Source: Macrostomum hystrix (lineage: Eukaryota; Animalia; Platyhelminthes). From it: 64,000 bases of DNA. Under the pieces are notes generated by a model. That model searched no databases and was not told the DNA's origin. It was given only the letters and a program-made list of their open reading frames with translations. The stretch covers positions 7,936,001 to 8,000,000 of the forward strand of contig CATNEN010000038.1 in the NCBI GenBank assembly GCA_950097015.1. Direction: 5' to 3'. A program made the translations under genes and the position numbers. This document shows, piece after piece, positions 3,250 through 29,341 of this stretch. Position 1 is the stretch's first letter; every line of letters begins with the position of its first letter.

Positions 3250-3660
3250 TGGGTGGGATGGGGATTAGGGACTGGAATGTGGGTTAGGGAATGGAATGTG
3301 GAGTAGGAACTGGAATAAGGGTTACGGAGTAGAATTTTGGTTAGGGAGTGGAATGTGGAGTAGGGAGTGGAATGGGGAGTAGAATGTGGAGTAGGAACTG
3401 GAATGTGGGTTAGGGAGTGGAATATGGAGTAGGGAGTGAAATGGGGAGTAGTGAGTGGAATGTGGGTTAGGGAGTGGAACGTGGAGTAGGGAGTGGAATG
3501 GGAAGTAGAATGTGGAGTAGGAACTGGAATGTGGGTTAGGGAGTGGAATGTGGAGTAGGGAGTGAAATGTGGAGTAGGGAGTGGAATGTGGAGTAGGGAG
3601 TGAAATGGGGAGTAGGGATTGGAATGTGGAGTAGGGACTGGAATGTGGAGTAGGGAGTGG
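3250..3660. repeat. Degenerate G-rich array (GGAATGTGGAGTAGGGAGT-like)
   Basis: Tandem periodicity. Confidence 0.9.
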
Positions 3661-4609
3661 GATGAATGATTCCTGCACACCGTGTCGGCATGTTGAAATC
3701 CATTGTCAATTGACTAATTTAAAAAAAATGCGTCATAAATTTTAGTGAGCGGACACGGTGGGGTCTAAGGAACGAAGCCTCTACTTACCAAAATTTTCAA
3801 AGTCATTAAAAATGCTAGTCCAGGTAAACAATTTCAATTAATTTTTGTTTGTGGGTCGTGTCGGTGCACGGAAGGATGTTTCTGCCAGACAGGCGCGGCT
3901 AAGGTTAAAAAGCATTTTATGTCTGACGCAACGAGCGAGCGATCGATGGACGCGTAATCGGACTGTTTCGTCATTTTATGAAGCTCCGAGGGCTGAACAT
4001 CATTGCTGAGCCTCAATTCCACAACGCTAACTTGACCTCATTTTATTTTAATACGATTTACAATTTTCGGAATCAGAGGCCTAACCATGGCCTTCCCGGG
4101 TGGAATGGTGAAGATTTCTTTCTGTTTTACGAACTTCTTTACAAACCATTTCTTTAAAAGCTGTTTCCTAACAAACGAATTGACTAAAAAATTTGGTCCA
4201 GTTTACTGGAAGCTTTATTTAGCAAAAAAGATTTACGAGTATATTATCTTAAATTTTCTTCGCGTCATAGAAGGAACTACAAACGTGGATTTTGGTTGGA
4301 AAATTTAGAATAAATTGCATATGCAGCAGCTAGGTATTTCAATTGTGCAATCGAAAAGTAAATCTAATACACGATTTGCGCCTGTAAATCAATACTGTAC
4401 ATTTAGAGGAAGTTAAATTTGATGGGCAAGTAATCAACTTTCTTAGAAGAGGAAAGATGAAACACCAAGTAATAACTTTAGATTATCAAATTTGGAATAC
4501 CATTTCGCCTGGATCCGCGAAATTCGACATAAGATAACCTTTGCGTAATAAGAAAACTGACCAATTTTTAGCAGCTAATGAATTCGCAAGGCGATGGTTG
4601 CGTGGAAAT

Positions 4610-4790
4610 GTGCTATTTTTAGCAGCAAAGAACTTTTCCACGCAATACTAACGTGATAAGTGTGCTATTTTTAGCAGCAAAGGATATTTTCCACGCAATA
4701 CTAGCGTGATAAGTGTGCTATTTTTAGCAGCAAAGGACATTTTCCACGCAATACTAGCGTGGTAAGTGTACTATTATTAGCAGCAAGGAC
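4610..4790. repeat. About 56-bp unit x3 (GTGCTATTTTTAGCAGCAAAG...)
   Basis: Tandem periodicity. Confidence 0.85.
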
Positions 4791-5288
4791 ATCCAGACTA
4801 TAAATTGACGATAAGATAAAGAAGCAGCCATTGATGCACATAAATAGGGCTTATTCGGCTTGAGGTTAGCTAACAGAGCATGTCGACAAGTTTTGTAAGT
4901 GGAAAAATAGCTGAAATTTTAATATAATAAAAATTATAAGTTGAAAGTTAAAAGTACTCATAACGTTGCTCATCTCACGACTATAAAATTTGTTGACGAA
5001 AAATTTCAAGGAATATCAGAGACTGTCACCAAAACTGTTCAGAAAATCACTTTTCTACAAGTGTGACATCAAGTAGTTAAAAAAATATTTCTGGGGGCCG
5101 ATACAAGGAAAACCAAGTCGTACAGTATTTTGGCCACAATAGGCAAAATGATTATCTTGGTAACTCGGACAGATCGAGCTATAATAAACCATTCTTCCAC
5201 ATACTTCTTAGATAAAGAAGCAGGAATTTCACAGGTATTGCCGCCCTACAAGAATGACACCTGGCCAGGGTTTCGCAGACAGTCAGGA

Positions 5289-8200
5289 TCATCGGGGCGC
5301 CACTAGGCGAGATTTCTCACCCTCTTTCTGCTTGGGGTTGCGGCATTTGCGCACCTGCCGGAATAGAAGCAGGCCGCAGACGGGCACAACGCAGAGGCCG
5401 CACACAATGGCCATGACTATGGCCGTTATGAGCAGAATCTGGTCATTGCGGTCAGGCTGGAAGTAGGCGCAGTCCCAGGCCGAGGCCGAGTACACGGTGC
5501 CCGGGTAGTTAAGAGGGCCGCTCAGGTTTGAAGCCGGCACAGCCGAGGTGAAAGTGTTGCAGGTGGACTTCGAGAATCCGAGCCGGCGATTGGCTCGGTC
5601 GAAGATTACGTAATAGCCCTCCATGAAAACGGCGCCTGTGGTGGAGGGGGCGTTAAGCTAGTTTTTGAGGGGAGCACGGCATTTGATTTCTGACACTTGA
5701 CAATACAATGATTGTTGCCATTTCGCTCGTTTGGGTAAGGGTTAGGGTTAGGGTAAGGGTTAGGGTTAGGGTAAAGGCCTGTTAAGATTGCTTGAAGGCA
5801 AATGTCGTTGAACCTTCTCTAGTAGTTTGAGCCGTAAATTAAGCGTTTAAAATGAATTTTCTGGAAGGTATTACAGAAGGTCTTGACTACCAGAAAAGGC
5901 CAGCAAACTCACCCAGAATGGCGCCCTTGCTGGAGCTCTGCAGGCCGAACTTGAAGCAGTCCTTGCCGGGAATGTCAAACACCTCGCCAACGTAGCGCAA
6001 GTACTGCTGCGGACTCAGGTTGAGGTCGATGTACTGCCGGTCTGAGTACAGCAGGCTGAAGGTGATGACTGGGAAGCGCTCCCAAGGCCCGGTCTTTTCC
6101 GGCAGGCACAGAAGTGTCTCGCCGCGGTAGAACCGATCGCCGACTCCGGCGACTTGGCCGGAGAGCCGGCTAGCGATGTTGGAGAATACTCGCTTCGGCA
6201 AGCGAATGTCTGTGGTGCCCGAATCCACGATGGTCTTGTCGAAATTGTACTCCTTGCAGTCCATGCCGAGTGTGACACCATTCAGCTTGATGTCCACTAT
6301 TACTACCTCGTAGTACCTGCCCAGAAGAATAGATTTAATAAAAAATGTGTTAGATCAGGGGACTTAATCGCATTTAGCTCGATTGCAAAACATAGAGCAT
6401 AAATTATACAGATCAAAAGTCCCACTGGAATTTAGATTTAACAACGTTTCCTACCCTACCCTATCTACATTTCTTTGATTTCCTACCCGTCTCTGATGAA
6501 ATTCATCTCGCTAGAATGTACACAAAGTAACAAAACATTTTTCCTACCCCACAAAGATTCAGCTCACGCTAGAATGTACACTCAACCGCTCAATTTTCCT
6601 ACCCCACATAAATTCAGCTATCGCTAGAATGTACACTCAACAGATTAATTTCCCTACCCAACATAGATACATTCAGCTATCGCTAGAATGTACACTCAAC
6701 ATATTAATTTTCCTACCCCACATAGATACAATCAGCTATCGCTAGAATGTACACTCAACATATTAATTTTCCTACCCCACATAGATACAATCAGCTATCG
6801 CTAGAATGTACACTCAACAGATTAATTTCCCTACCCAACATAGATACAATCAGCTCACGCTAGAATGTACACTCAACAGATTAATTTCCCTACCCAACAT
6901 AGATACAATCAGCTCACGCTAGAATGTACACTCAACAGATTAATTTCCCTACCCAACATAGATACAATCAGCTCACGCTAGAATGTACACTCAACAGATT
7001 AATTTCCCTACCCAACATAGATACATTCAGCTATCGCTAGAATGTACACTCAACATATTAATTTCCCTACCCAACATAGATACAATCAGCTCACGCTAGA
7101 ATGTACACTCAACAGAGTTTCCTACCCAGCATAGATTCAATCATCCCTTAACCCATATAAAGACGGCACACTCAAAACCGCTGGAAAAACTGACCACTCC
7201 TTGCGGATCGGCACATAGACCAAAGGTCCGCCCATCAGTTTGGGATCGGCTCCGCCAAGTGTAAGCGAACCGTCCATGGCTTTGGCTGTTGCGGCAGACC
7301 TAGTTGTGCCGCACAACTGTAGCGAGAAAATATCAGTCAGGCCCCATTGTTCAACCAGACTGTCGAAGAAGGTGCGTATTCGAGGATGCGGGCTGGCGAT
7401 GTGGCTGTAGGCCATGCCGAGGATGCCCTGCCAATCGGCTGTGCTGATAAAGAACTCGCTACTGGTGTCGATAACAGCAATGTAGGGTCGCACGGTTCGG
7501 TTGGGATAGAATGACATGCGAACCAGGTCGGTTGCCAGGTGACCATTCCAGCGGCCCTGAGTGTAGGGCACGTACACTGTCTGGCCCTGCCAGGAGATGC
7601 TGGACGATCTTTCAGGGTGAAAATACCGCTTGATGTCGCTGTGTGGCTTGCCGGCTACGGCAAAGTTACTGCTGCCAGTGTCAATCAGGATGTTGAACTG
7701 CGGGTGCGAGGCCGGGTGAGGTCACGATGTATAATGAGCTCTCAAGCCGCAATGTAATGTATTGTCCAGTCATGTGATTTAGTGGGCAACTGGGACATGC
7801 AACGAGCCCCAGAGTAGCTTGACAGTCTTGAGACATTCAAACCATTCAAAATTTAAATTACCTAGCGGTGTGCGATCGGACGAGAATTACATCATGCGAT
7901 GAGAGATTAAATCTATATATATAAAAGTGAAAACTCTGTCTGTGTGTGTGCAACCTTTTGTCTTTATAGACGCCGAAACCGCTCAACCAAATCGCACCAA
8001 ACTTTGCACATACCTAAAACCACCTACGCTGAGTGCAATAGGCTACTCAAATTCCCGAAAAATCATTTCCTTCCTGCTCAAAAGTGCAAAAAACTGCTCA
8101 AAAATCGTCAAAAAATCACTCAATTCAACATATCGTCGCCCCACTTTGTCAGATTTTCTCCAAATTTGATCCACTTACACTTTACATGTTTTCCAACAAT

Positions 8201-17818: not shown

Positions 17819-19695
17819 TCAGACAGCGGCGCCACTCAGCTTCTTGATGGCGGCCACGCCCTTCTCCTGGTACTCCTCCCGGCTGATCCAGAACTTCTCG
17901 TCGTGATCCTTCATGATGTCGGCCAGGATGGCGCCGCCAAGGAACACCATGTGCTTGCGCCGCGGCGGGTCCTCAATGCGAATCTTGAACTTGCTCAACC
18001 GGGCCGTGTCACCTTTGAGCACCTGCTCAAGGTAGAGCTGCTTCATCTCACGCTCAAGCCGGCTGGGCAGGCCAGGATACATGGTGGTGCCGCCAGACAG
18101 CACAATCTTCTTGTAGAACTCGGGCCGGATGTCCATGTCGGCCTGCTGGATGGTATTGAACAGCAGCTCAGCGACACCGGCGCCATCGACGTCGACCAGG
18201 TGCGGCTGAAACAGAGCCTCGGGAGCCTGGAAGCGCTCACCGCTCACCTGTGGGACGGGTGGGAAGTGGGAGAGGAAGTTATGCCCACCTGACCGATTTC
18301 CACTTCCCAGACCTTGATACCCATTCCAGCCCCTGATACCCACCCCATTCCAGCCCCTGATACCCACCCCATTCCAGCCCCTGATACCCACCCCATTCCA
18401 GCCCCTGATACCCACCCCATTCCAGCTCGACAGCCCATTCCAGCACGACACCTACCCCATTCCATCCCGACACCCACCCCATTCCAGCTCGACACCCACC
18501 CCATTCCAGCCCGACACCCACCCATTCCAGCGCGACACCTCACCTCATTCCAGCCCGACACCCACCTCATTCGAGCCCAACACCCACCCCATTCCTGACC
18601 CTGATACCCACCCCATTCCAGACCCTGATACCCACCCCATTCCAGCTCGACACCCACCCCATTCCAGCCCGACACCCACCCATTCCAGCCTGACAACCAC
18701 CCATTCCATTCTAACACCTACATACCCAGCTCATTTTTTAATGCAGCCTTTTTTCTATTTCCTATTCCAGCTCTTAAACCATCTCACACGTTACCCAGCT
18801 GTGGTATTTTTCCCATCCCAGCCCTGCTCCCGTGTTACCTTGATGACGCGGCCATCCGGCAGGGTGTACTTCTCCACCAGCACGGTGGTCTCAAGGGACA
18901 GGCGCTCCTCCTGAGCAATGTCGTAGGCCACGTAGCACAGTCGCTCCTTGAGCTGGCGAATGGTCTCGAAGTCGGCGCTGGCATTGAAGGCGTAGCCGCG
19001 CAGCAGCAGCAGCTTGATAAGATAGCGGGTGATATCCCGGCCGGCGATGTTCAACCGCTTGGTGAGGTGCGGCAGGGCGAAGCCGTCGTATACAGGGCAG
19101 ATGTGGGTGACGCCGTCGCCGGAGTCAACAACAACGCCAGTTAGGAGGCCCTGAGCGTACAGGGTCAGCACCGCCTGCGGAGGGAATGACAAATGAGCGG
19201 AGAGAATGAACTCAAGTGTACTCAAATGTCTTGTAGCCAATCAAAGCACAATTAGTGTATCACTAGGCTTACCTGAATGGCCACGTACACGCCGGCAAAG
19301 TTGTACTTTTCGAACATGGCTTCGACCATGCGCTCCCGATTCTTGGCCGGGTTCATGGGCGGCTCAGTCAGCAGCACCTTGGTGTTCGGGCAGTCCAGGT
19401 TCATCTTCTTTGGCCCGAAGGTGTAATCGTAGAGATGCAGCATGTCCGTCCAATTGCTGACAATGCCATTCTCCATGGGATAGTTGACTTGCAGCATCTG
19501 GCGCACCTCTGCGGCCTCGTCTCCAACCATGAGGTCGCGGATCTCCACGTTGCCAATACGAGATGAGCTGCGTAAGATAGGCCGGCCAACCAGGGAGGGG
19601 AAGATGTGCTCAGGATAATTAGCCCCGGCACGGCCGCACTTCACGAAACCAGTGCCATTGTCGCACACGACCACATGCCTGCCCTTGCTGTCCAT
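17819..19695 (-). CDS. ACTR2: Actin-related protein 2, 395 aa; exons 19695-19273, 19174-18839, 18247-17819
   Basis: [24 protein letters not shown]|[53 protein letters not shown]. Both introns are phase-0 GT-AG. Confidence 0.97.
18315..18715. repeat. CACCCCATTCCAGC-based array in ARP2 intron 2
   Basis: Tandem periodicity of about 22-24 bp. Confidence 0.9.
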
Positions 19696-21895: not shown

Positions 21896-22409
21896 GAAAT
21901 ACCCTGAACGGGATATTGTGGGGACCAAGGCCGAACCACGCGAGCAGCGAGTATAATGAAAGGCGATGAAGCTTGTAAAACAAAAATAGATTTTAACACA
22001 GTGTTTTGCTTCGAAACATGAAAGCGAAAATGATTATTTTGGTCCAGAATCGTTTGAGTCTTTGTGGATCATAATCTCCTATTTATTCTTTAAGAATTTT
22101 ATAATTTATAGAAGAGCAAAAGCAGCAAGTAGAAAAATCACGGGTGCTGGATAAAGCGGCGGGAATTTATTTCATGCACAATCGCGAATCGAATGTGCAC
22201 TAATCAGATGAGGTTAAGTAAGGCGGAATCGCAATGTGCTGGATATGCATTAGTTTGTGTAAAATCCTCACTTGTAAATGGAATACAAACGGATTGCTGG
22301 TTCAGGAACCAATTTATGCGTTTGAAAACAAGACTATTTCTTAAAACCAGCTTCTGATGATGCTTTAATCTTATAAGGAATAGACATCTATTTTGAAAAT
22401 TAAAAAATT

Positions 22410-23270
22410 CACCTCTAGAGAATGACCATTCTCTTTAAATTCTTACCCCTTGAAAATGACCATTTTGAATGACCATTCTTTTAAAATTCTTACCCCTTGA
22501 AAATGACCATTTTGAAATCTCAATCCTCGAGAGTGACCATTTTGAAATCTCAATCCTCGAGAGTGACCATTTTGAAATCTCAATCCTCGAGAGTGACCAT
22601 TTTGAAATCTCAATCCTCGAGAGTGACCATTTTGAAATCTCAATCCTCGAGAGTGACCATTTTGAAATCTCAATCCTCGAGAGTGACCATTTTGAAATCT
22701 CAACCATCGAGAGTGACCACTTTTTAATCTCAATCCTTGAGAGTGATCACTTTTTAATCTCAATCCTCGAGAGTGACCATTTTGAAATCTCAACCATCGA
22801 GAGTGACCACTTTTTAATCTCAATCCTCGAGAGTGACCATTTTGAAATCTCAATCCTCGAGAGTGACCATTTTTAATCTCAATCCTCGAGAGTGACCATT
22901 TTGAAATCTCAATCCTCGAGAGTGACCATTTTGAAATCTCAATCCTCGAGAGTGACCATTTTTAATCTCAATCCTCGAGAGTGACCATTTTGAAATCTCA
23001 ATCCTCGAGAGTGACCATTTTGAAATCTCAATCCTCGAGAGTGAACATTTTTAATCTCAATCCTCGAGAGTGACCATTTTTAATCTCAATCCTCGAGAGT
23101 GACCATTTTGAAATCTCAATCCTCGAGAGTGACCATTTTTAATCTCAATCCTCGAGAGTGACCATTTTGAAATCTCAATCCTCGAGAGTGACCATTTTGA
23201 AATCTCAATCCTCGAGAGTGACCATTTTGAAATCTCAATCCTCGAGAGTGACCATTTTTAATCTCGCAAT
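22410..23270. repeat. 30-bp array GAGTGACCATTTTGAAATCTCAATCCTCGA
   Basis: About 28 copies. Confidence 0.96.
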
Positions 23271-23457
23271 TTCGCAAGTTTCGCAATCTCAACCCTTTGG
23301 AAATGACCGTTTCAAAATCTCATTCCCAAGAAATGACACTATTAAAATTTAAGCCCATAGAGTTAGTATCACAAAAGTTCGCCTCAAGATATTAAAACCA
23401 AGTTTAGGTTTCAGACACTAGGAATTAATATAAGCAAAAGCAAAGGTGAGCAAATTC

Positions 23458-23571
23458 TCAAAGAATTTCGCATCTGCGCTTCTTTGGCTTCTTGATGCGA
23501 CCGCTGCCGCTGCCGCTGCTGGCAGACTGCTGCTTGCGATGGTGGATCTCCGTCAGCAGGTCGAAGAAGGC
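23458..23571 (-). CDS. RALA: Alternative distal last exon of Ral (isoform 203 aa): AFFDLLTEIHHRKQQSASSGSGSGRIKKPKKRRCEIL*
   Basis: TAG acceptor at 23574-23572 in phase 0, helix-5 signature AFFDLL.EI..RK, polybasic stretch, CAAX, stop. Confidence 0.88.
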   Translation of the reverse strand, partial: AFFDLLTEIHHRKQQSASSGSGSGRIKKPKKRRCEIL

Positions 23572-23624
23572 CTACGATTGGTGTTGTTGGTGGCAGTGTT
23601 AATGAACGTTTAAATACCGCCTGA

Positions 23625-23945
23625 CCTGATAGATAAGTTTCACCTGTTTTAAACAACTGCCCCACCTGTTAGATAGTAGTTTCACCTGTTTTAAACAACT
23701 GCCTCACCTGTTAGATAGTAGTTTCACCTGTTTTAAACAACTGCCCCACCTGTTAGATAGTAGTTTCACCTGTTTTAGACAACTGCCCCACCTGTTAGAT
23801 AGTAGTTTCACCTGTTTTAGACAACTGCCCTACCTGTTAGATAGTAGTTTCACCTGTTTTAAACAACTGCCCCACCTGTTAGATAGTAGTTTCACCTGTT
23901 TTAAGCAACTGCCCCACCTGTTAGATAGTAGCTTCACCTGTTTAT
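23625..23945. repeat. 42-bp array with two CACCTG per unit, between the Ral last exons
   Basis: TTCACCTGTTTTAAACAACTGCCCCACCTGTTAGATAGTAGT, about 7 copies. Confidence 0.93.
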
Positions 23946-24424
23946 AAACATCTGCCCGTACCTTATTAATAATAATTACAAAAATATTCAATTTAACGAA
24001 GAGTGGTTGAGCACTTGAATATATTTTTATTAACAAAAGTCAAAAGATTAAATTTATAATCAATCAATATAGAAACGTTATGAATTTGATGCCGGCAATG
24101 ACATTTGCGCATTGCTCGAGACAAAAAAATCACAGAATAAGTTTAATTTACTTAGCAATAATGTCTACAAATTTATTCCTTGTATATCTAATCAGTAGTT
24201 TATTGTAAAATATCATTATTATGCAGTCCTGTGACAATCGGAATCAGTTGGTTTATCGACTAACAAATAGAAATCCAAGTTTAGAATCTTGGGATTATTT
24301 TTGCATGCTTCATTTATGTCAGAATAAATACAACTTATTTCATATGCCCAAAAGTTTAACGAACAAGTTTTTTTTAAAACGTTGGCCTCCTCACTTTTGC
24401 AAACCCTATCGTTACAGGGTTAAA

Positions 24425-24738
24425 AGGCAGAAGGGAGGCAGAAGGCGGGCAGAAGGGAGGCAGAAGGGAGGCAGAAGGCAAGCAGAAGGCAGGCAGAAGG
24501 GAGGCAGAAGGCAAGCAGAAGGCAGGCAGAAGGGAGGCAAAGGCAGGCAGAAGGGAGGCAGAAGGCAGGCAGAAGGCAGGCAGAAGGGAGGCAGAAGGCA
24601 GGCAGAAGGCAGGCAGAAGGCAGGCAGAAGGCAGGCAGAAGGCAGGCAGAAGGGAGGCAGAAGGCAGGCAGAAGGCAGGCAGAAGGGAGGCAGAAGGCAG
24701 GCAGAAGGCAGGCAGAAGGCAGGCAGAAGGGAGGCAGA
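24425..24738. repeat. GCAGAAGG(G/C)AG purine array
   Basis: 11-bp-based periodicity. Confidence 0.9.
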
Positions 24739-24837
24739 CGGGATTCTCACTAGATCATGAGTGAGTGAGAATAAGTTCTTTTTTCTAGTGGCCAGGTTGT
24801 ACCCAAGCGAACAATCGAATGTGTTCATAGTACAATG

Positions 24838-24874
<37 letters not shown>

Positions 24875-24881
24875 CCCCTAA

Positions 24882-27800
24882 TCAAAGCACAGAGCAGCAG
24901 CATTTGGCAGTGGAGCCACCAGCCTGGGCGGCCATGGCCGACTGCTGCCTGCTGAGCTGCGGCCGGGTGCGCTTGTGATCCAGCACGGCGCGGATCAAGC
25001 CGAAGAAGGCCTGATTTAGCACAGAGACACGCGATAGGCAAAGGAGTGGGCGGTATTGGCTAACATTGTTAGTGAAAATACTTTCACTGCCGCTATGAGT
25101 AGGCAGTACTGAAAAATTCCGAAAATTATATTCCCGGATAGCTTAATATTCCAGCTAGAAAACAGAACGCTAGCAGTTACACATATTTGGCAGCTGATCT
25201 CTTAAAATGTCACATTTAAGGTAAGCATTTTAAAATCTCCCTATAAAAACAATACTAGTTTGTTAAACAATCTAATATAAAAAACACCTGTTTTTTGGAT
25301 ATTAGTAGAAAAAGATAAGTTAAAGCACTAAAACAAGTAAGCAGTGGCAGAGCAGTGCCGCTCTGAGTTCGAATCCGCGGCAAGCCCACATTTAATTGGG
25401 TAGATTAGCCGCGGAGAGAAGGCTTGGGGGCTTGTCGTGCAATTTACGCTCCTGAGGGCCAACCTCCAAGGCACAGTGAGAGTGTAGACTGCCTGACGAT
25501 GAGAAAGCCAGGGCAGATGTACACACCTGTGCGAGCGTGTGCCTGCGTACAGTATCTGTGTGCGCGTGTGCTCAGGAGTGAGTGGAATGGGCAGAATTGC
25601 CTCCTCGCTGGCTGCAGGTCTAGTGTCATCAAATGATGTGCCATTGCCCGCAGCCCTCCTGCAACTATTATTATTATTATTATTATTATAAGCAGAGCCT
25701 GACCTTGTCAACATTCTCCCGAGTCTTGGCCGAAGTCTCCAGGTAGGGGATGCGCCAGGACTCGGCGCGAGTCTCCGCATCCTTGGCTGACACCTGGCGA
25801 CTGTCCGTGAGGTCACACTTGTTGCCCACTAGCAGCATGGGAACAGACTCATCGCCCTTCACCCGGATAATCTGCTCCCTGGAAATGGCATAATTGTCTA
25901 TTTTGATAAATTACAACAAGAACAATTGGGCCAGGTGTCCAAAGACTGTGTACAGACTGTTCAAAGACTGTGTACAGACTGTCAGAAGACTGTGTACATA
26001 CTGTTCAAAGACTGTGTACAGACTGTCAAAAGACTGTACAGCTTCTCAGACTGTGGACTGACAGTGTCAATGGATGCTGATAAAACAGCTACCGCCCACC
26101 TGAACTCATTAGTGGCAGTGAATGACTCCGGATCTGTGATTGAGAACACGCATAGGAAGCCCTCTCCGCCGCGGAAGTAATTATCCCTGATGCTGGCGTA
26201 GTCCTCCTGGCCGGCGGTGTCCAGGATGTCGATGTGCACCTCGGTGCCCTCCAGCGTGACCTTCTTGCGGTACATATCGACTTTGGTGGGCTCGTAGTCT
26301 TCGACGAACTGCGGGGGTTGATTGATAATAACAGTAATAACTGCGGGGGTTGATTGATAATAACAGTAATAACTGCGGGGGTTGATTGATAATAACAGTA
26401 ATAACTGCAGGGGTTGATTGATAATAACAGTAATAACTGCGGGGGTTGATTGATAATAACAGTAATAACTGCGGGGGTTGATTGATAATAACAGTAATAA
26501 CTGCGGGGGTTGATTGATAATAACAGTAATAACTGCGGGGGTTGATTGATAATAACAGCAATAACTGCGGGGGTTGATTGATAATAACAGTAATAACTGC
26601 GGGGATTGATTGATAATAACAGTAATAACTGCGGGGGTTGATTGATAATAACAGAAATAACTGCGGGGGTTGATTGATAATAACAGTAATAACTGCGGGG
26701 GTTGATTGATAATAACAGTAATAACTGCGGGGGTTGATTGATAATAACAGTAATAACTGCGGGGGTTGATTGATAATAACAGTAATAACTGCAGGGGTTG
26801 ATTGATAATAACAGTAATAACTGCGGGGGTTGATTGATAATAACAGTAATAACTGCGGGGGTTGATTGATAATAACAGTAATAACTGCGGGGGTTGATTG
26901 ATAATAACAGTAATAACTGCGGGGGTTGATTGATAATAACAGCAATAACTGCGGGGGTTGATTGATAATAACAGAAATAACTGCGGGGGTTGATTGATAA
27001 TAACAGTAATAACTGCGGGGGTTGATTGATAATAACAGTAATAACTGCGGGGGTTGATTGATAATAACAGTAATAACTGCGGGGGTTGATTGATAATAAC
27101 AGAAATAACTGCGGGGGTTGATTGATAATAACAGTAATAACTGCGGGGGTTGATTGATAATAACAGTAATAACTGCGGGGGTTGATTGATAATAACAGTA
27201 ATAACTGCGGGGATTGATTGATAATAACAGTAATAACTGCGGGGGTTGATTGATAATAACAGTAATAACTGCGGGGGTTGATTGATAATAACAGTAATAA
27301 CTGCGGGGGTTGATTGATAATAACAGTAATAACTGCGGGGGTTGATTGATAATAACAGTAATAACTGCGGGGGTTGATTGATAATAACAGTAATAACTGC
27401 GGGGTTTGATTGATAATAACAGAAATAACTGCGGGGGTTGATTGATAATAACAGTAATAACTGCGGGGGTTGATTGATAATAACAGTAATAACTGCGGGG
27501 GTTGATTGATAATAACAGTAATAACTGCGGGGGTTGATTGATAATAACAGTAATAACTGCGGGGGTTGATTGATAATAACAGTAATAACTGCGGGGGTTG
27601 ATTGATAATAACAGTAATAACTGCGGGGGTTGATTGATAATAACAGTAATAACTGCGGGGTTGATTGATAATAACAGTAATAACTGCGGGGGTTGATTGA
27701 TAATAACAGTAATAACTGCGGGGGTTGATTGATAATAACAGTAATAACTGCGGGGGTTGATTGATAATAACAGTAATAACTGCGGGGGTTGATTGATAAT

Positions 27801-29341
27801 AACAGTAATAACTGCGGGGGTTGATTGATAATAACAGTAATAACTGCGGGGGTTGATTGATAATAACAGTAATAACTGCGGGGGTTGATTGATAATAACA
27901 GTAATAACTGCGGGGGTTGATTGATAATAACAGTAATAACTACGGGGGTTGATTGATAATAACAGTAATAACTGCGGGGGTTGATTGATAATAACAGCAA
28001 TAACTGCAGGGGTTGATTGATAATAACAGTAATAACTGCGGGGGTTGATTGATAATAACAGTAATAACTGCGGGGTTGATTGATAATAACAGTAATAACT
28101 GCGGGGGTTGATTGATAATAACAGTAATAACTGCGGGGGTTGATTGATAATAACAGTAATAACTGCGGGGGTTGATTGATAATAACAGTAATAACTGCGG
28201 GGGTTGATTGATAATAACAGTAATAACTGCGGGGGTTGATTGATAATAACAGTAATAACTGCGGGGGTTGATTGATAATAACAGTAATAACTGCGGGGGT
28301 TGATTGATAATAACAGTAATAACTGCGGGGGTTGATTGATAATAACAGTAATAACTACGGGGGTTGATTGATAATAACAGTAATAACTGCGGGGGTTGAT
28401 TGATAATAACAGCAATAACTGCAGGGGTTGATTGATAATAACAGTAATAACTGCGGGGGTTGATTGATAATAACAGTAATAACTGCGGGGGTTGATTGAT
28501 AATAACAGAAATAACTGCGGGGGTTGATTGATAATAACAGTAATAACTGCGGGAGGGCTACGGACAATGGGATATCATCTGGTGACAGTGGACCCGCAGC
28601 CAGCAGAGAGCAGCCAGCACTGACTCTACCCATTCCACTGACTCCTGAGTACACACTTACACAGGTGTGAACTCGTACATATGCCTTTGTTATCTTCAGG
28701 CAATGTACGCTCTCACTCCAAGCTTTCTAGGCTTCTCTCCGCGGCTGAGATTTAAATGAGTGAAAACTAAGATTCGAACTCCAGACCAATCTCTAATCTA
28801 CAATGAGATTCGAACTCCAGACCAATCTCTAATCTACATTGGGATTCGAACTCCAGACCAATCTCTAATCTACAACGAGATTCGAACTCCAGACAAAACT
28901 CTAATTTACAATGGGATTCGAACTCCAGACAAAACTCGAATCTACAATGGGATTCGAACTCCAGACAAAACTCTAAGCTACAATGAGATTCGAACTCCAG
29001 ACAAAACTCTAAGCTACAATGAGATTCGAACTCCAGACAAAACTCTAATCTACAATGGGATTCGAACTCCAGACAAAACTCTAAGCTACAATGAGATTCG
29101 AACTCCAGACAAAACTCTAAGCTACAATGGGATTCGAACTCCAGACCAATCTCTAACCGATAATGAGATTCGAACTCCAGACCAATCTCTAGCCTACAAC
29201 CAGATTAGATTATTAAACACGTCTCACCTCATCGTACATGAACTGCAAGGTGAGGGCACTCTTGCCCACAGCTCCGCTTCCCACCATGATGATCTTGTGC
29301 ACCGGCTGGGAGGAGCTGGTACCACTCTTCTGCTTGGACAT
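24882..29341 (-). CDS. RALA: Ral GTPase, isoform with proximal last exon (208 aa, ends KCCCSVL); exons 29341-29228, 26308-26100, 25878-25704, 25010-24882
   Basis: [24 protein letters not shown]|[56 protein letters not shown]|AFF. All phases are consistent. Confidence 0.88.
25345..25688 (+). mobile_element. tRNA-derived SINE with (TTA)n tail and 7-bp TSD in Ral intron 3
   Basis: A-box-like TGGCAGAGCAG, B box GTTCGAATCC, (TTA)n tail, TAAGCAG at 25338-25344 and 25689-25695. Homologous copies occur at about 55066, 58643 and 62190. Confidence 0.82.
25935..26065. repeat. 22-bp array AAAGACTGTGTACAGACTGTTC in Ral intron 2
   Basis: About 5 copies. Confidence 0.85.
26309..28551. repeat. 32-bp array, about 70 copies, consisting of the Ral exon-2 acceptor region
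   Basis: Gene-strand unit TTATTACTGTTATTATCAATCAACCCCCGCAG. The last copy abuts exon 2. Confidence 0.97.
28765..29200. repeat. 36-bp array containing a Pol III B-box-like motif, in Ral intron 1
   Basis: G(A/G)GATTCGAACTCCAGAC..., about 12 copies; minus strand reads GAGTTCGAATC(T/C)C. Confidence 0.93.

What the first reader, a model, noticed from the sequence alone, without database searches (positions are those of the whole stretch)
23458..25010. Ral has two alternative last exons giving a KRAS4A/4B-like membrane-anchor switch
Seen: after the exon-3 donor (NVDK|, phase 0) there are two paralogous phase-0 terminal exons, both beginning AFF.L. The proximal one (25010-24882) ends [10 protein letters not shown], i.e. 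a CAAX with two adjacent upstream cysteines and no lysine run. The distal one (23571-23458) ends RIKKPKKRRCEIL*, i.e. a CAAX with a polybasic run. Each has minus-strand AATAAA signals downstream (about 24172 and 24199; about 22082). Known: Ras-family proteins need either palmitoylation or a polybasic stretch as a second signal, KRAS makes both through exons 4A/4B, and terminal Leu favours geranylgeranylation. Vertebrates diversify Ral tails with two genes (RALA/RALB). Inference: independent evolution of the 4A/4B design in a Ral gene, giving two differently localised isoforms from one locus.
Basis: partly seen in the sequence, partly recalled or inferred. Interest (0 to 1): 0.85.

Follow-up and report, generated by a model that had tools for sequence, protein, structure and literature searches.

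The report
Flatworm Ral gene with two tails
A Ral signalling-switch gene of the flatworm Macrostomum hystrix makes two messenger RNAs that differ only in the last exon: one gives the usual lysine-rich lipid-anchor tail and the other a cysteine-rich tail. This copies a design known from human KRAS and CDC42, and I found no description of it for Ral.

Summary
A minus-strand Ral gene has coding exons 29341-29228, 26308-26100 and 25878-25704. Two phase-0 last exons follow. The proximal one (25010-24882) ends ...[10 protein letters not shown]. The distal one (23571-23458) ends ...RIKKPKKRRCEIL*.

- **Organism.** Assembly size, contig count and spliced leader identify Macrostomum hystrix.
- **RNA evidence.** cDNA contigs from four runs of one study break exactly where a k=31 assembly graph must break. 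That pattern needs exon 3 spliced to both last exons, and of five scenarios simulated only that one reproduces it. By a rough depth estimate the proximal form is about 30-40% of the transcripts.
- **Ancestry.** The distal tail is the ancestral type. The M. lignano orthologue and a second Ral gene in this genome carry it, and nearly every Ral tail inspected is of this lysine-rich type. The proximal exon is a diverged duplicate, unique in the genome, with coding-like third-position GC content.
- **New.** The flatworm spliced leader is also trans-spliced onto the distal acceptor. Its terminal AUG is in frame with that exon.
- **Untested.** Conservation of the proximal exon in other species, palmitoylation and localisation.

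Verdict: real; a new variant of a known kind; moderate interest.

The parts
29228..29341 (-). Ral coding exon 1 ([38 protein letters not shown], donor GAG|gtgaga)
   Evidence: Read. Pfam Ras profile positions 1-22. The loose end at 26310 in all four runs reads the end of this exon.
26100..26308 (-). Ral coding exon 2 (effector loop [18 protein letters not shown])
   Evidence: Best solved-structure matches are RalA and RalB at about 1e-33, against about 1e-21 for Ras. The cDNA joint 26099/25877 has GT..AG ends on the minus strand in four runs.
25704..25878 (-). Ral coding exon 3 (NKCD, TSAK, ends ...ENVDK, phase 0, donor AAG|gtcagg)
   Evidence: Ras profile 96-151. The cDNA unitig ends exactly 10 nt past this exon in all four runs.
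24882..25010 (-). Proximal alternative last exon, coding part with stop. It encodes the end of helix alpha-5 ([10 protein letters not shown]), a non-basic linker and ...AKCCCSVL*.
   Evidence: The cDNA contig lies at 24880-25009 with 21 unaligned upstream letters. That is the split expected for a junction with exon 3. The intron at 25017-25319 has zero depth. The exon is unique in the genome. GC by codon position is 0.60/0.57/0.83.
24003..24881 (-). 3' UTR of the proximal exon. It holds a (CTG)n run and an 11-nt repeat of 28 copies. AATAAA signals lie at 24204-24199, 24177-24172 and 24031-24026.
   Evidence: cDNA contigs cover 24709-24831. They also cover 24511 down to 24080, 24021, 24003 or 23875, depending on the run. 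Repeats are and signals. The true poly(A) site was not determined.
23458..23571 (-). Distal alternative last exon, coding part with stop. It is the ancestral Ral tail: AFFDLLTEIHHRK...RIKKPKKRRCEIL*.
   Evidence: The cDNA unitig starts at 23572 in four runs. The M. lignano orthologue P0176 joins ...ENVDK to AFYDLLTEIHHRKQQTAVTGNGGGRSKKPKKRRCEIL. The paralogue's only last exon is of this type.
23571..23573 (-). Acceptor of the distal exon. It serves cis-splicing from exon 3 and also receives the spliced leader by trans-splicing.
   Evidence: The loose end at 23572 in all four runs reads, on the minus strand, (T)GCGAAGACTCAATTTATTGCAT, followed by a G that matches the genome and then the exon. 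The same sequence is the 3' part of the published Macrostomum spliced leader and of SL RNA genes in this genome.
22082..22171 (-). Candidate poly(A) signals for the distal exon (AATAAA at 22171-22166 and 22087-22082), beyond a 30-nt tandem repeat at 22504-23265
   Evidence: No RNA evidence: the laid stretch ended at 23300.

Best explanation
One Ral GTPase gene of Macrostomum hystrix produces two mRNAs by choosing between two last exons.

Exon 3 (...ENVDK) is spliced either to a proximal exon or to a distal exon. If the proximal exon is used, the mRNA ends at poly(A) sites within about 1 kb. If it is skipped, splicing goes to the distal exon 1.4 kb further on. Each last exon supplies three things: the last roughly 10 residues of the G domain (end of helix alpha-5), the hypervariable linker and a CAAX box ending in Leu, which is the signal for geranylgeranylation.

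- **Distal tail.** This is the ancestral, canonical Ral tail, with 7 Lys/Arg in the 15 residues before CEIL. It should bind acidic membranes electrostatically.
- **Proximal tail.** This is a diverged duplicate of that exon. It has lost the basic run and carries two cysteines directly before the CAAX cysteine (CC-CSVL). Such cysteines are the usual substrate for S-palmitoylation, as in RhoB, H-Ras and brain CDC42.

The inferred result is two Ral proteins with the same GTPase core but different second membrane signals, and hence different trafficking.

Shown: the exons, their duplicate origin, use of both in RNA, and the ancestral status of the distal type. Inferred: prenylation, palmitoylation and differential localisation.

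As a side product, the distal acceptor is also trans-spliced to the spliced leader. The most likely substrate is RNA left downstream after cleavage at the proximal poly(A) site.
For: 1. **Sequence.** Both exons are phase 0, follow AG acceptors, and are open to a CAAX plus stop.
2. **Gene identity.** Pfam Ras hits on exons 1-3. Exon 2 matches RalA/RalB structures at 4e-34 to 1e-31, against 1e-21 or worse for Ras.
3. **cDNA contigs, four runs of one study.**
   - The exon 2-exon 3 joint has GT..AG ends, and the contig carries exon 1 as a loose end, so these runs are cDNA.
   - That unitig stops 10 nt past exon 3, which is exactly the length of the prefix GCCTTCTTCG shared by the two last exons.
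   - The proximal-exon unitig aligns from 25009 with 21 unaligned letters upstream.
   - The distal-exon unitig starts at 23572 with none.
   - A k=31 unitig simulation of five scenarios reproduces all three break points only when exon 3 joins both exons and the spliced leader joins the distal exon.
4. **Depth.** Unitig depths are additive: exon 2-3 is 106/173/89/113, against proximal 32/67/27/32 plus distal 69/96/53/104. This is a rough measure only.
5. **No intron retention.** Depth is zero in intron 25017-25319 and at 23603-23703.
6. **Duplicate origin.**
7. **Distal type is ancestral.** M. lignano orthologue P0176 (203 aa; 29 of 37 tail residues identical by my reading of the two tails). 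The paralogues (this genome's second Ral gene and M. lignano P0263) have a single polybasic last exon. The Ral tails printed from the searches are polybasic with few exceptions, and none is a cysteine-rich, non-basic CAAX tail.
8. **Proximal exon looks coding.** Third-position GC is 0.83, against 0.60 and 0.57 at positions 1 and 2, and about 0.40-0.45 in flanking DNA. The hydrophobic alpha-5 positions are kept (F2, F3, L5, I6, V9, read).
Against: - The exon 3-to-distal junction was not printed as a joint. It is inferred from contig break points, from the simulation and from the orthologue.
- All RNA comes from one study. Contigs cannot give true isoform ratios, tissue bias or poly(A) sites.
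- No orthologue of the proximal exon was seen. The M. lignano proteome in the database holds only the distal-type protein. That annotation averages one transcript per gene, so this is weak evidence of absence.
- Prenylation, palmitoylation and localisation are untested.
- CEIL has an acidic a1 residue, which is unusual. It is the same in M. lignano.
Confidence: 0.8

Rival explanations
1. The proximal exon is really spliced in, but it is a young exon restricted to M. hystrix or its close kin and has no distinct function. It would be a neutral by-product of an exon duplication.
For: - No orthologous proximal exon was found.
- It is unique in the genome.
- The gene's introns are full of recent tandem repeats, so local duplication is common here.
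Against: - It makes up roughly 30-40% of transcripts in all four runs (rough).
- The duplicate has diverged almost completely from the distal exon at DNA level beyond the first 10 nt (81 identities in a 133-column gapped alignment). Yet it keeps the frame, the alpha-5 hydrophobic pattern and a CAAX ending in Leu.
- It shows third-position GC enrichment like the constitutive exons.
Confidence: 0.13
2. The distal 'exon' is not an alternative end of Ral mRNA. It would belong only to a separate spliced-leader trans-spliced RNA, so Ral would have a single (proximal) tail.
For: In all four runs a contig joins the spliced leader to the distal acceptor.
Against: - Simulation of this scenario predicts the exon 2-3 unitig running on for 131 nt, through the whole proximal exon piece. 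It also predicts the distal unitig carrying 28 nt of leader. Neither was observed.
- Exon 2-3 depth is about three times the proximal depth.
- The M. lignano orthologue is annotated with the distal-type tail joined to ...ENVDK.
- The distal tail is the canonical Ral tail.
Confidence: 0.03
3. Assembly artefact: two alleles or haplotigs of one last exon were placed in tandem.
For: The published assembly needed haplotig purging.
Against: - The two exons differ far more than alleles would, and their flanks are unrelated.
- cDNA contigs match both exons without a single differing letter, and the depths add up.
Confidence: 0.01

Closest known systems
KRAS4A / KRAS4B (alternative fourth exons of vertebrate KRAS)
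   Same: - Two alternative last coding exons each encode the end of the G domain, the hypervariable region and the CAAX box.
- One tail is polybasic. The other relies on a palmitoylatable cysteine.
- The extra exon arose by exon duplication and insertion into the preceding intron (abstracts of PMC9882654 and PMC11636682).
   Different: - The gene family differs (Ral, not Ras) and the origin is independent.
- Both CAAX boxes here end in Leu (geranylgeranyl type), not the farnesyl type.
- The proximal tail has two cysteines directly next to the CAAX cysteine and no KIKK-like second basic patch.
- By the PMC9882654 abstract, exon 4A came from the NRAS gene. Here the duplicate appears to come from the gene's own last exon.
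CDC42 canonical (CVLL) versus brain (CCIF) splice variants
   Same: Alternative last exons of a small GTPase switch between a prenyl-plus-basic tail and a tail with a palmitoylated cysteine beside the prenyl cysteine. This rests on established knowledge, recalled and not checked here.
   Different: - It is a Rho-family gene and vertebrate-specific.
- The brain tail is a CCaX box. Here the box is CSVL with two cysteines before it.
Vertebrate RALA and RALB
   Same: The same GTPase subfamily. Functional diversity is carried by the C-terminal hypervariable tail (PMC9139244).
   Different: - Vertebrates use two genes, and both tails are polybasic and end in CCIL or CCLL.
- That review contains no mention of splicing of the RAL genes themselves.
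- M. hystrix has two Ral genes and, in one of them, two tails.
RhoB / H-Ras type tails (cysteines next to the CAAX cysteine)
   Same: CC-CSVL resembles RhoB ...CCKVL, in which the cysteine before the prenylated one is palmitoylated (recalled knowledge).
   Different: Different GTPase subfamily. Modification was not tested here.
Spliced-leader trans-splicing at internal acceptors in Macrostomum
   Same: The same leader as published for M. lignano. About 1% of M. hystrix genes are reported to have several SL sites (PMC10468722).
   Different: Here the internal site is the acceptor of an alternative last exon, and the leader's AUG is in frame with the 37-codon tail.

Membership tests
Ral subfamily of Ras-like small GTPases | Ras-family G domain | tested here: met
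   Pfam PF00071 on exon 1 (8.7e-5), exon 2 (4.7e-21) and exon 3 (1.2e-15). Together they cover profile positions 1-151 of 162. In orthologue P0176 the domain reaches residue 176, which is 10 residues into the last exon.
Ral subfamily of Ras-like small GTPases | Closer to Ral than to any other Ras-family member | tested here: met
   Exon 2 against PDB sequences: the ten best matches are all Ral-a, RalA or RalB (4e-34 to 1e-31). Next come NRas and KRas at about 1e-21. Full-length hits of the profile search are named Ral-A or Ral-a.
Ral subfamily of Ras-like small GTPases | Ral-type switch I / effector stretch (YEPTKADSYRKK) | tested here: met
   [12 protein letters not shown] in exon 2, with two substitutions.
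Ral subfamily of Ras-like small GTPases | Polybasic hypervariable tail ending in CAAX with X = Leu | tested here: met
   The distal tail meets it fully. The proximal tail has a CAAX ending in Leu but no polybasic run.
KRAS4A/4B-type alternative-last-exon membrane-anchor switch (a mechanism, not a homology family) | Two mutually exclusive last coding exons, each with the end of alpha-5, a linker and a CAAX box | tested here: met
KRAS4A/4B-type alternative-last-exon membrane-anchor switch (a mechanism, not a homology family) | Both splice junctions present in RNA | tested here: met
   The proximal junction shows as the split-alignment boundary 25703|25009. The distal junction is inferred from the unitig branch 10 nt past exon 3 and from the start of the distal unitig. 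Only the two-junction scenario fits the simulation. All RNA is contigs from one study, and no raw junction reads were seen.
KRAS4A/4B-type alternative-last-exon membrane-anchor switch (a mechanism, not a homology family) | One tail polybasic without extra cysteines, the other with a palmitoylatable cysteine and no polybasic run | tested here: met
   In the 15 residues before the CAAX box, the distal tail has 7 K+R and 0 Cys, and the proximal tail has 1 K+R and 2 Cys.
KRAS4A/4B-type alternative-last-exon membrane-anchor switch (a mechanism, not a homology family) | Demonstrated palmitoylation and different localisation of the two isoforms | not testable with these tools
   Needs acyl-biotin exchange and tagged tail fusions.
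KRAS4A/4B-type alternative-last-exon membrane-anchor switch (a mechanism, not a homology family) | Descent from the KRAS 4A/4B exons | tested here: not met
   The gene is Ral. The extra exon resembles the gene's own distal exon, and it has no other match in the genome. So it works like KRAS4A/4B but is not a member.
Flatworm spliced-leader trans-splicing | SL RNA gene with leader exon, GT donor and Sm-like site; leader found joined to an AG acceptor in RNA | tested here: met
   The genome holds 43 copies of the 23-nt leader end (one mismatch allowed), against none for the control. The gene context reads ...TTGCATG|GTAAGA..ATATTTTTAG.. followed by a stem. It is identical to the published 44-nt leader. 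It is joined at 23572 in four runs.

The most novel reading that the evidence does not exclude
The spliced-leader-to-distal-exon RNA may be a working mRNA rather than a processing by-product. The leader's only AUG is its last three bases, and it is in frame with the phase-0 distal exon. The RNA would therefore encode a free 38-residue peptide, M-AFFDLLTEIHHRK...KKPKKRRCEIL. That is a stand-alone polybasic, geranylgeranylated Ral tail, which could compete with Ral or other polybasic GTPases for prenyl-processing enzymes, chaperones or membrane sites. Production would be coupled to use of the proximal poly(A) site, so making the cysteine-rich isoform would also release a tail-only peptide of the other isoform.
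Probability: 0.06. Interest if true: 0.8.

Novelty: new variant of a known kind. Interest (0 to 1): 0.5.

Why it matters
How small GTPases reach different membranes is set largely by the second signal next to the prenyl group. The two textbook cases in which one gene switches that signal by alternative last exons are KRAS and CDC42, both in vertebrates.

A third, independent case in Ral, in a flatworm, would show that this design is a recurrent evolutionary solution. It would also supply a natural experiment on what a palmitoyl-type anchor does to Ral and exocyst signalling. The sister species M. lignano can be made transgenic (PMC5730564), so tail-GFP fusions are feasible.

The locus also shows how alternative polyadenylation and spliced-leader trans-splicing interact at one acceptor.

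Tried and rejected
- **Proximal exon search.** The search for homologous proteins with the proximal exon alone found no candidate. The tool sees only proteins of 23-73 aa for this query, so the blank says nothing about full-length proteins.
- **Distal exon search.** The frame upstream is closed by the acceptor's TAG, so I did not extend it.
The M. lignano genomic locus could therefore not be fetched.
- **Representative search** with exon 2 gave mostly fragmentary or mis-spliced Ral models and nothing close to Macrostomum.
- **Profile and orthologue searches.** These were a profile of a fish RalA plus the separate exon rows and a search with M. lignano P0176. They found only two Macrostomum proteins, both with polybasic tails.
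- **tRNA scan** of the highly expressed intronic repeat found none.
- **Earlier notes of this scan** hold nothing on Ral tails.
- **Joined protein left out.** The spliced protein was never sent to any search, fold or look-up tool. Exons were searched apart, by reference. Full-length structure prediction and exact-sequence look-ups were therefore omitted.
- **Local concatenation only.** One sandbox script concatenated window substrings, solely to predict where a k=31 assembly graph would break.
- **Rejected readings.** A separate SL-only transcript for the distal exon, intron retention and haplotig tandem placement were all rejected; see the rival explanations.
Full report
**What is there**

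On the minus strand the window carries a Ral small-GTPase gene.
- Coding exon 1 is 29341-29228 (MSKQK...FMYDE, donor GAG|gtgaga).
- Exon 2 is 26308-26100 ([16 protein letters not shown]...DTAGQE...).
- Exon 3 is 25878-25704 and ends ...[11 protein letters not shown] with donor AAG|gtcagg, in phase 0.

Pfam places exons 1-3 on positions 1-151 of the 162-position Ras profile. Exon 2 matches solved RalA and RalB chains at 4e-34 to 1e-31, while Ras proteins start at about 1e-21. The gene is therefore Ral.

**The two last exons**

Both follow AG acceptors in phase 0.
- Proximal, 25010-24882: [42 protein letters not shown].
- Distal, 23571-23458: AFFDLLTEIHHRKQQSASSGSGSGRIKKPKKRRCEIL*.

The exons share their first 10 nt (GCCTTCTTCG) and then differ (G versus A).

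Their similarity is beyond chance. The global DNA alignment scores 19.5, against -6.3 +/- 4.2 for shuffles, and the protein alignment beats 2000 of 2000 shuffles. In the M. lignano orthologue the Ras domain runs 10 residues into the last exon. So each alternative exon must complete helix alpha-5. The proximal exon keeps the hydrophobic positions (F2, F3, L5, I6, V9).

**Organism**

A loose end in the RNA data led to a 23-nt sequence present 43 times in the genome. It sits in typical spliced-leader RNA genes: leader exon, GTAAGA donor, Sm-like site and a stem. It is identical to the leader published for Macrostomum lignano (PMC5173321).

The assembly statistics are 220,453,370 bp, 42 contigs and a longest contig of 35,345,953 bp, and the window lies on that contig. 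They equal those of the Macrostomum hystrix assembly (PMC10468722, Table 1).

**RNA evidence**

Four runs of one study hold about half of the sampled words of 23400-25900. They are recorded with unknown type, but they are cDNA. Their contigs skip the exon 2/exon 3 intron with GT..AG ends and carry the end of exon 1 as a loose end at the exon 2 acceptor. Three contig boundaries are the same in all four runs.
- (a) The exon 2-3 contig aligns to 25703 and has 9 further letters. That is 10 letters past exon 3, exactly the prefix the two last exons share.
- (b) The proximal-exon contig aligns from 25009 with 21 unaligned letters upstream. The aligner gave the ambiguous G to the exon 3 side, as it did in (a). 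A leader-joined contig would instead have aligned to 25011.
- (c) The distal-exon contig begins at 23572 with nothing upstream.

I simulated k=31 unitigs for five scenarios, using window and locus substrings in the sandbox only. Only one scenario reproduces a, b and c: exon 3 to proximal, plus exon 3 to distal, plus leader to distal. Without the cis distal junction, the exon 2-3 unitig would run on through the proximal exon. Without the cis proximal junction, it would run 29 nt into the distal exon.

The intron stretches 25017-25319 and 23603-23703 have zero depth, so intron retention does not explain the coverage. Unitig depths add up: 106/173/89/113 for exon 2-3, against 32/67/27/32 for proximal plus 69/96/53/104 for distal. 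That puts the proximal form at roughly 30-40% and leaves little room for the leader-joined form. The tool warns that contig depth is a poor measure, so this is only an indication.

Contigs also cover the proximal 3' UTR down to 24080, 24021, 24003 or 23875, depending on the run. The distal 3' end was outside the laid stretch.

**Which exon is ancestral**

A second Ral gene lies 9.5 Mb away on the same contig, with 75% identity in exon 3. It has a single last exon, AFSDLVTEIHRRKLQSAAAENPSSDKKRKKRRCTLL, and no second CAAX-ending tail-like exon in the 14 kb downstream that I scanned.

M. lignano has orthologues of both genes.
- P0176 (203 aa) has the tail AFYDLLTEIHHRKQQTAVTGNGGGRSKKPKKRRCEIL. 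By my reading of the two tails, 29 of 37 residues are identical to the distal exon, including CEIL.
- P0263 carries the tail of the second gene.

The Ral tails printed from the searches, from sponges-to-vertebrates-type sampling, are polybasic with few exceptions, and none is a cysteine-rich, non-basic CAAX tail. Of 222 CAAX-ending Ral- or Ras-like proteins scanned, seven had three or fewer basic residues before the box. Several of those are mis-spliced models, and one is a Ral-like protein ending CVLS without upstream cysteines.

The distal exon is therefore the conserved, canonical tail. The proximal exon is the derived duplicate, inserted into what was the last intron. It has no other match in the genome. 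Its GC by codon position (0.60/0.57/0.83) mirrors the constitutive exons and differs from the flanks (0.40-0.45). This speaks for long use as coding sequence.

**Mechanism**

Shown: alternative last-exon choice, coupled to alternative polyadenylation, gives two Ral proteins that are identical to residue 166 and differ in the end of alpha-5, the linker and the anchor.

Inferred from established CAAX rules:
- Both boxes end in Leu and should be geranylgeranylated.
- The distal tail (7 K+R before the box, no extra Cys) should use charge as its second signal.
- The proximal tail (1 K+R, two Cys directly before the CAAX Cys) should use S-palmitoylation, as RhoB, H-Ras or brain CDC42 do.
- Localisation should therefore differ.

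None of these lipid steps could be tested here.

**Spliced leader at the distal acceptor**

In all four runs a contig reads (T)GCGAAGACTCAATTTATTGCAT, then a G that matches the genome, then the distal exon. The simplest reading follows the operon-type logic: after cleavage at the proximal poly(A) site, the downstream RNA keeps an acceptor without a partner donor, and so it receives the leader. This is inference.

About 1% of M. hystrix genes are reported to have several leader sites. The leader's only AUG is its last three bases and is in frame with the exon. Leader AUGs creating reading frames are a known issue (PMC9851317). A 38-residue tail-only peptide is therefore conceivable but unsupported.

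**Comparison and novelty**

The design works like KRAS4A/4B (PMC9882654 and PMC11636682 abstracts) and like the CDC42 splice variants. It is not related to them by descent. A recent RAL review has no mention of splicing of the RAL genes themselves, and my literature searches found no description of alternative Ral tails. I rate it a new variant of a known kind.

One caveat comes from a honeybee-type transcript ORF (P0189). It carries two tandem Ral tail segments, so duplication of the last Ral exon may have happened in other lineages too. This was not followed up.

**Limits**

- The RNA evidence is from contigs of one study.
- The exon 3-to-distal junction is inferred, not printed.
- The joined protein was never submitted to any tool, so no full-length fold or exact look-up was made.

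Noticed in passing
window 25407-25620 (intron between exon 3 and the proximal exon): This stretch has contig depth of about 3,500-6,500, against about 100 for the Ral exons. Many contigs match it at 95-99% identity with diverse flanks. It looks like a dispersed, highly transcribed repeat (SINE-like). ARAGORN finds no tRNA there.
   Followed up: partly
window 26307-28553: A 32-nt tandem repeat of 70 copies, each ending in a copy of the exon 2 acceptor (...ccccgcag). The cDNA contigs join exon 1 to the last copy only, at 26308.
   Followed up: partly
G000:C38:17,500,635-17,503,740 (L017/L018, L010, L021): A second Ral gene with a similar exon layout and a single polybasic last exon (...KKRKKRRCTLL). 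Its M. lignano orthologue is P0263. The flatworm therefore has two Ral genes and three Ral tails.
   Followed up: yes
protein P0189 (transcript ORF from public runs, identical to Apis Ral-a over residues 1-201): After the normal end ...KKKKCKIL, the reading frame continues with Q and then a second tail, VFFDLMRAIAARKAQENQGDGSERKKKRNCCILL. This suggests a duplicated Ral tail exon in honeybees, and possibly alternative tails there as well.
   Followed up: no
G000 contigs C15, C17 and C42 (for example L006-L008): Spliced-leader RNA genes recur at about 11.6-11.7 kb spacing on three small contigs, so they sit in a long tandem unit. Single copies are scattered on the large contigs.
   Followed up: no
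window 24840-24868, 24425-24738, 23624-23957 and 22504-23265: The proximal 3' UTR starts with a (CTG)n run a few bases after the stop codon and then holds an 11-nt repeat of 28 copies. A 42-nt repeat of 8 copies lies just upstream of the distal acceptor. A 30-nt repeat of 25 copies lies in the presumed distal 3' UTR. One run shows a 21-nt length variant of the 11-nt repeat at 24485.
   Followed up: no
window 17819-19695 (-) and about 32900 (-): The neighbours on the same strand look like an actin-related protein 2 gene downstream ([21 protein letters not shown]...) and an Obg-like ATPase (OLA1-type P-loop, [13 protein letters not shown]) upstream.
   Followed up: no
proteins P0227, P0331 and P0336 (leaf-beetle Ral-a): These Ral proteins end ...KKKKHCCLFMCC...KKKRCCLFFC and ...KKKRCCLFYCA. 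They are polybasic but lack a standard CAAX end and have several cysteines.
   Followed up: no
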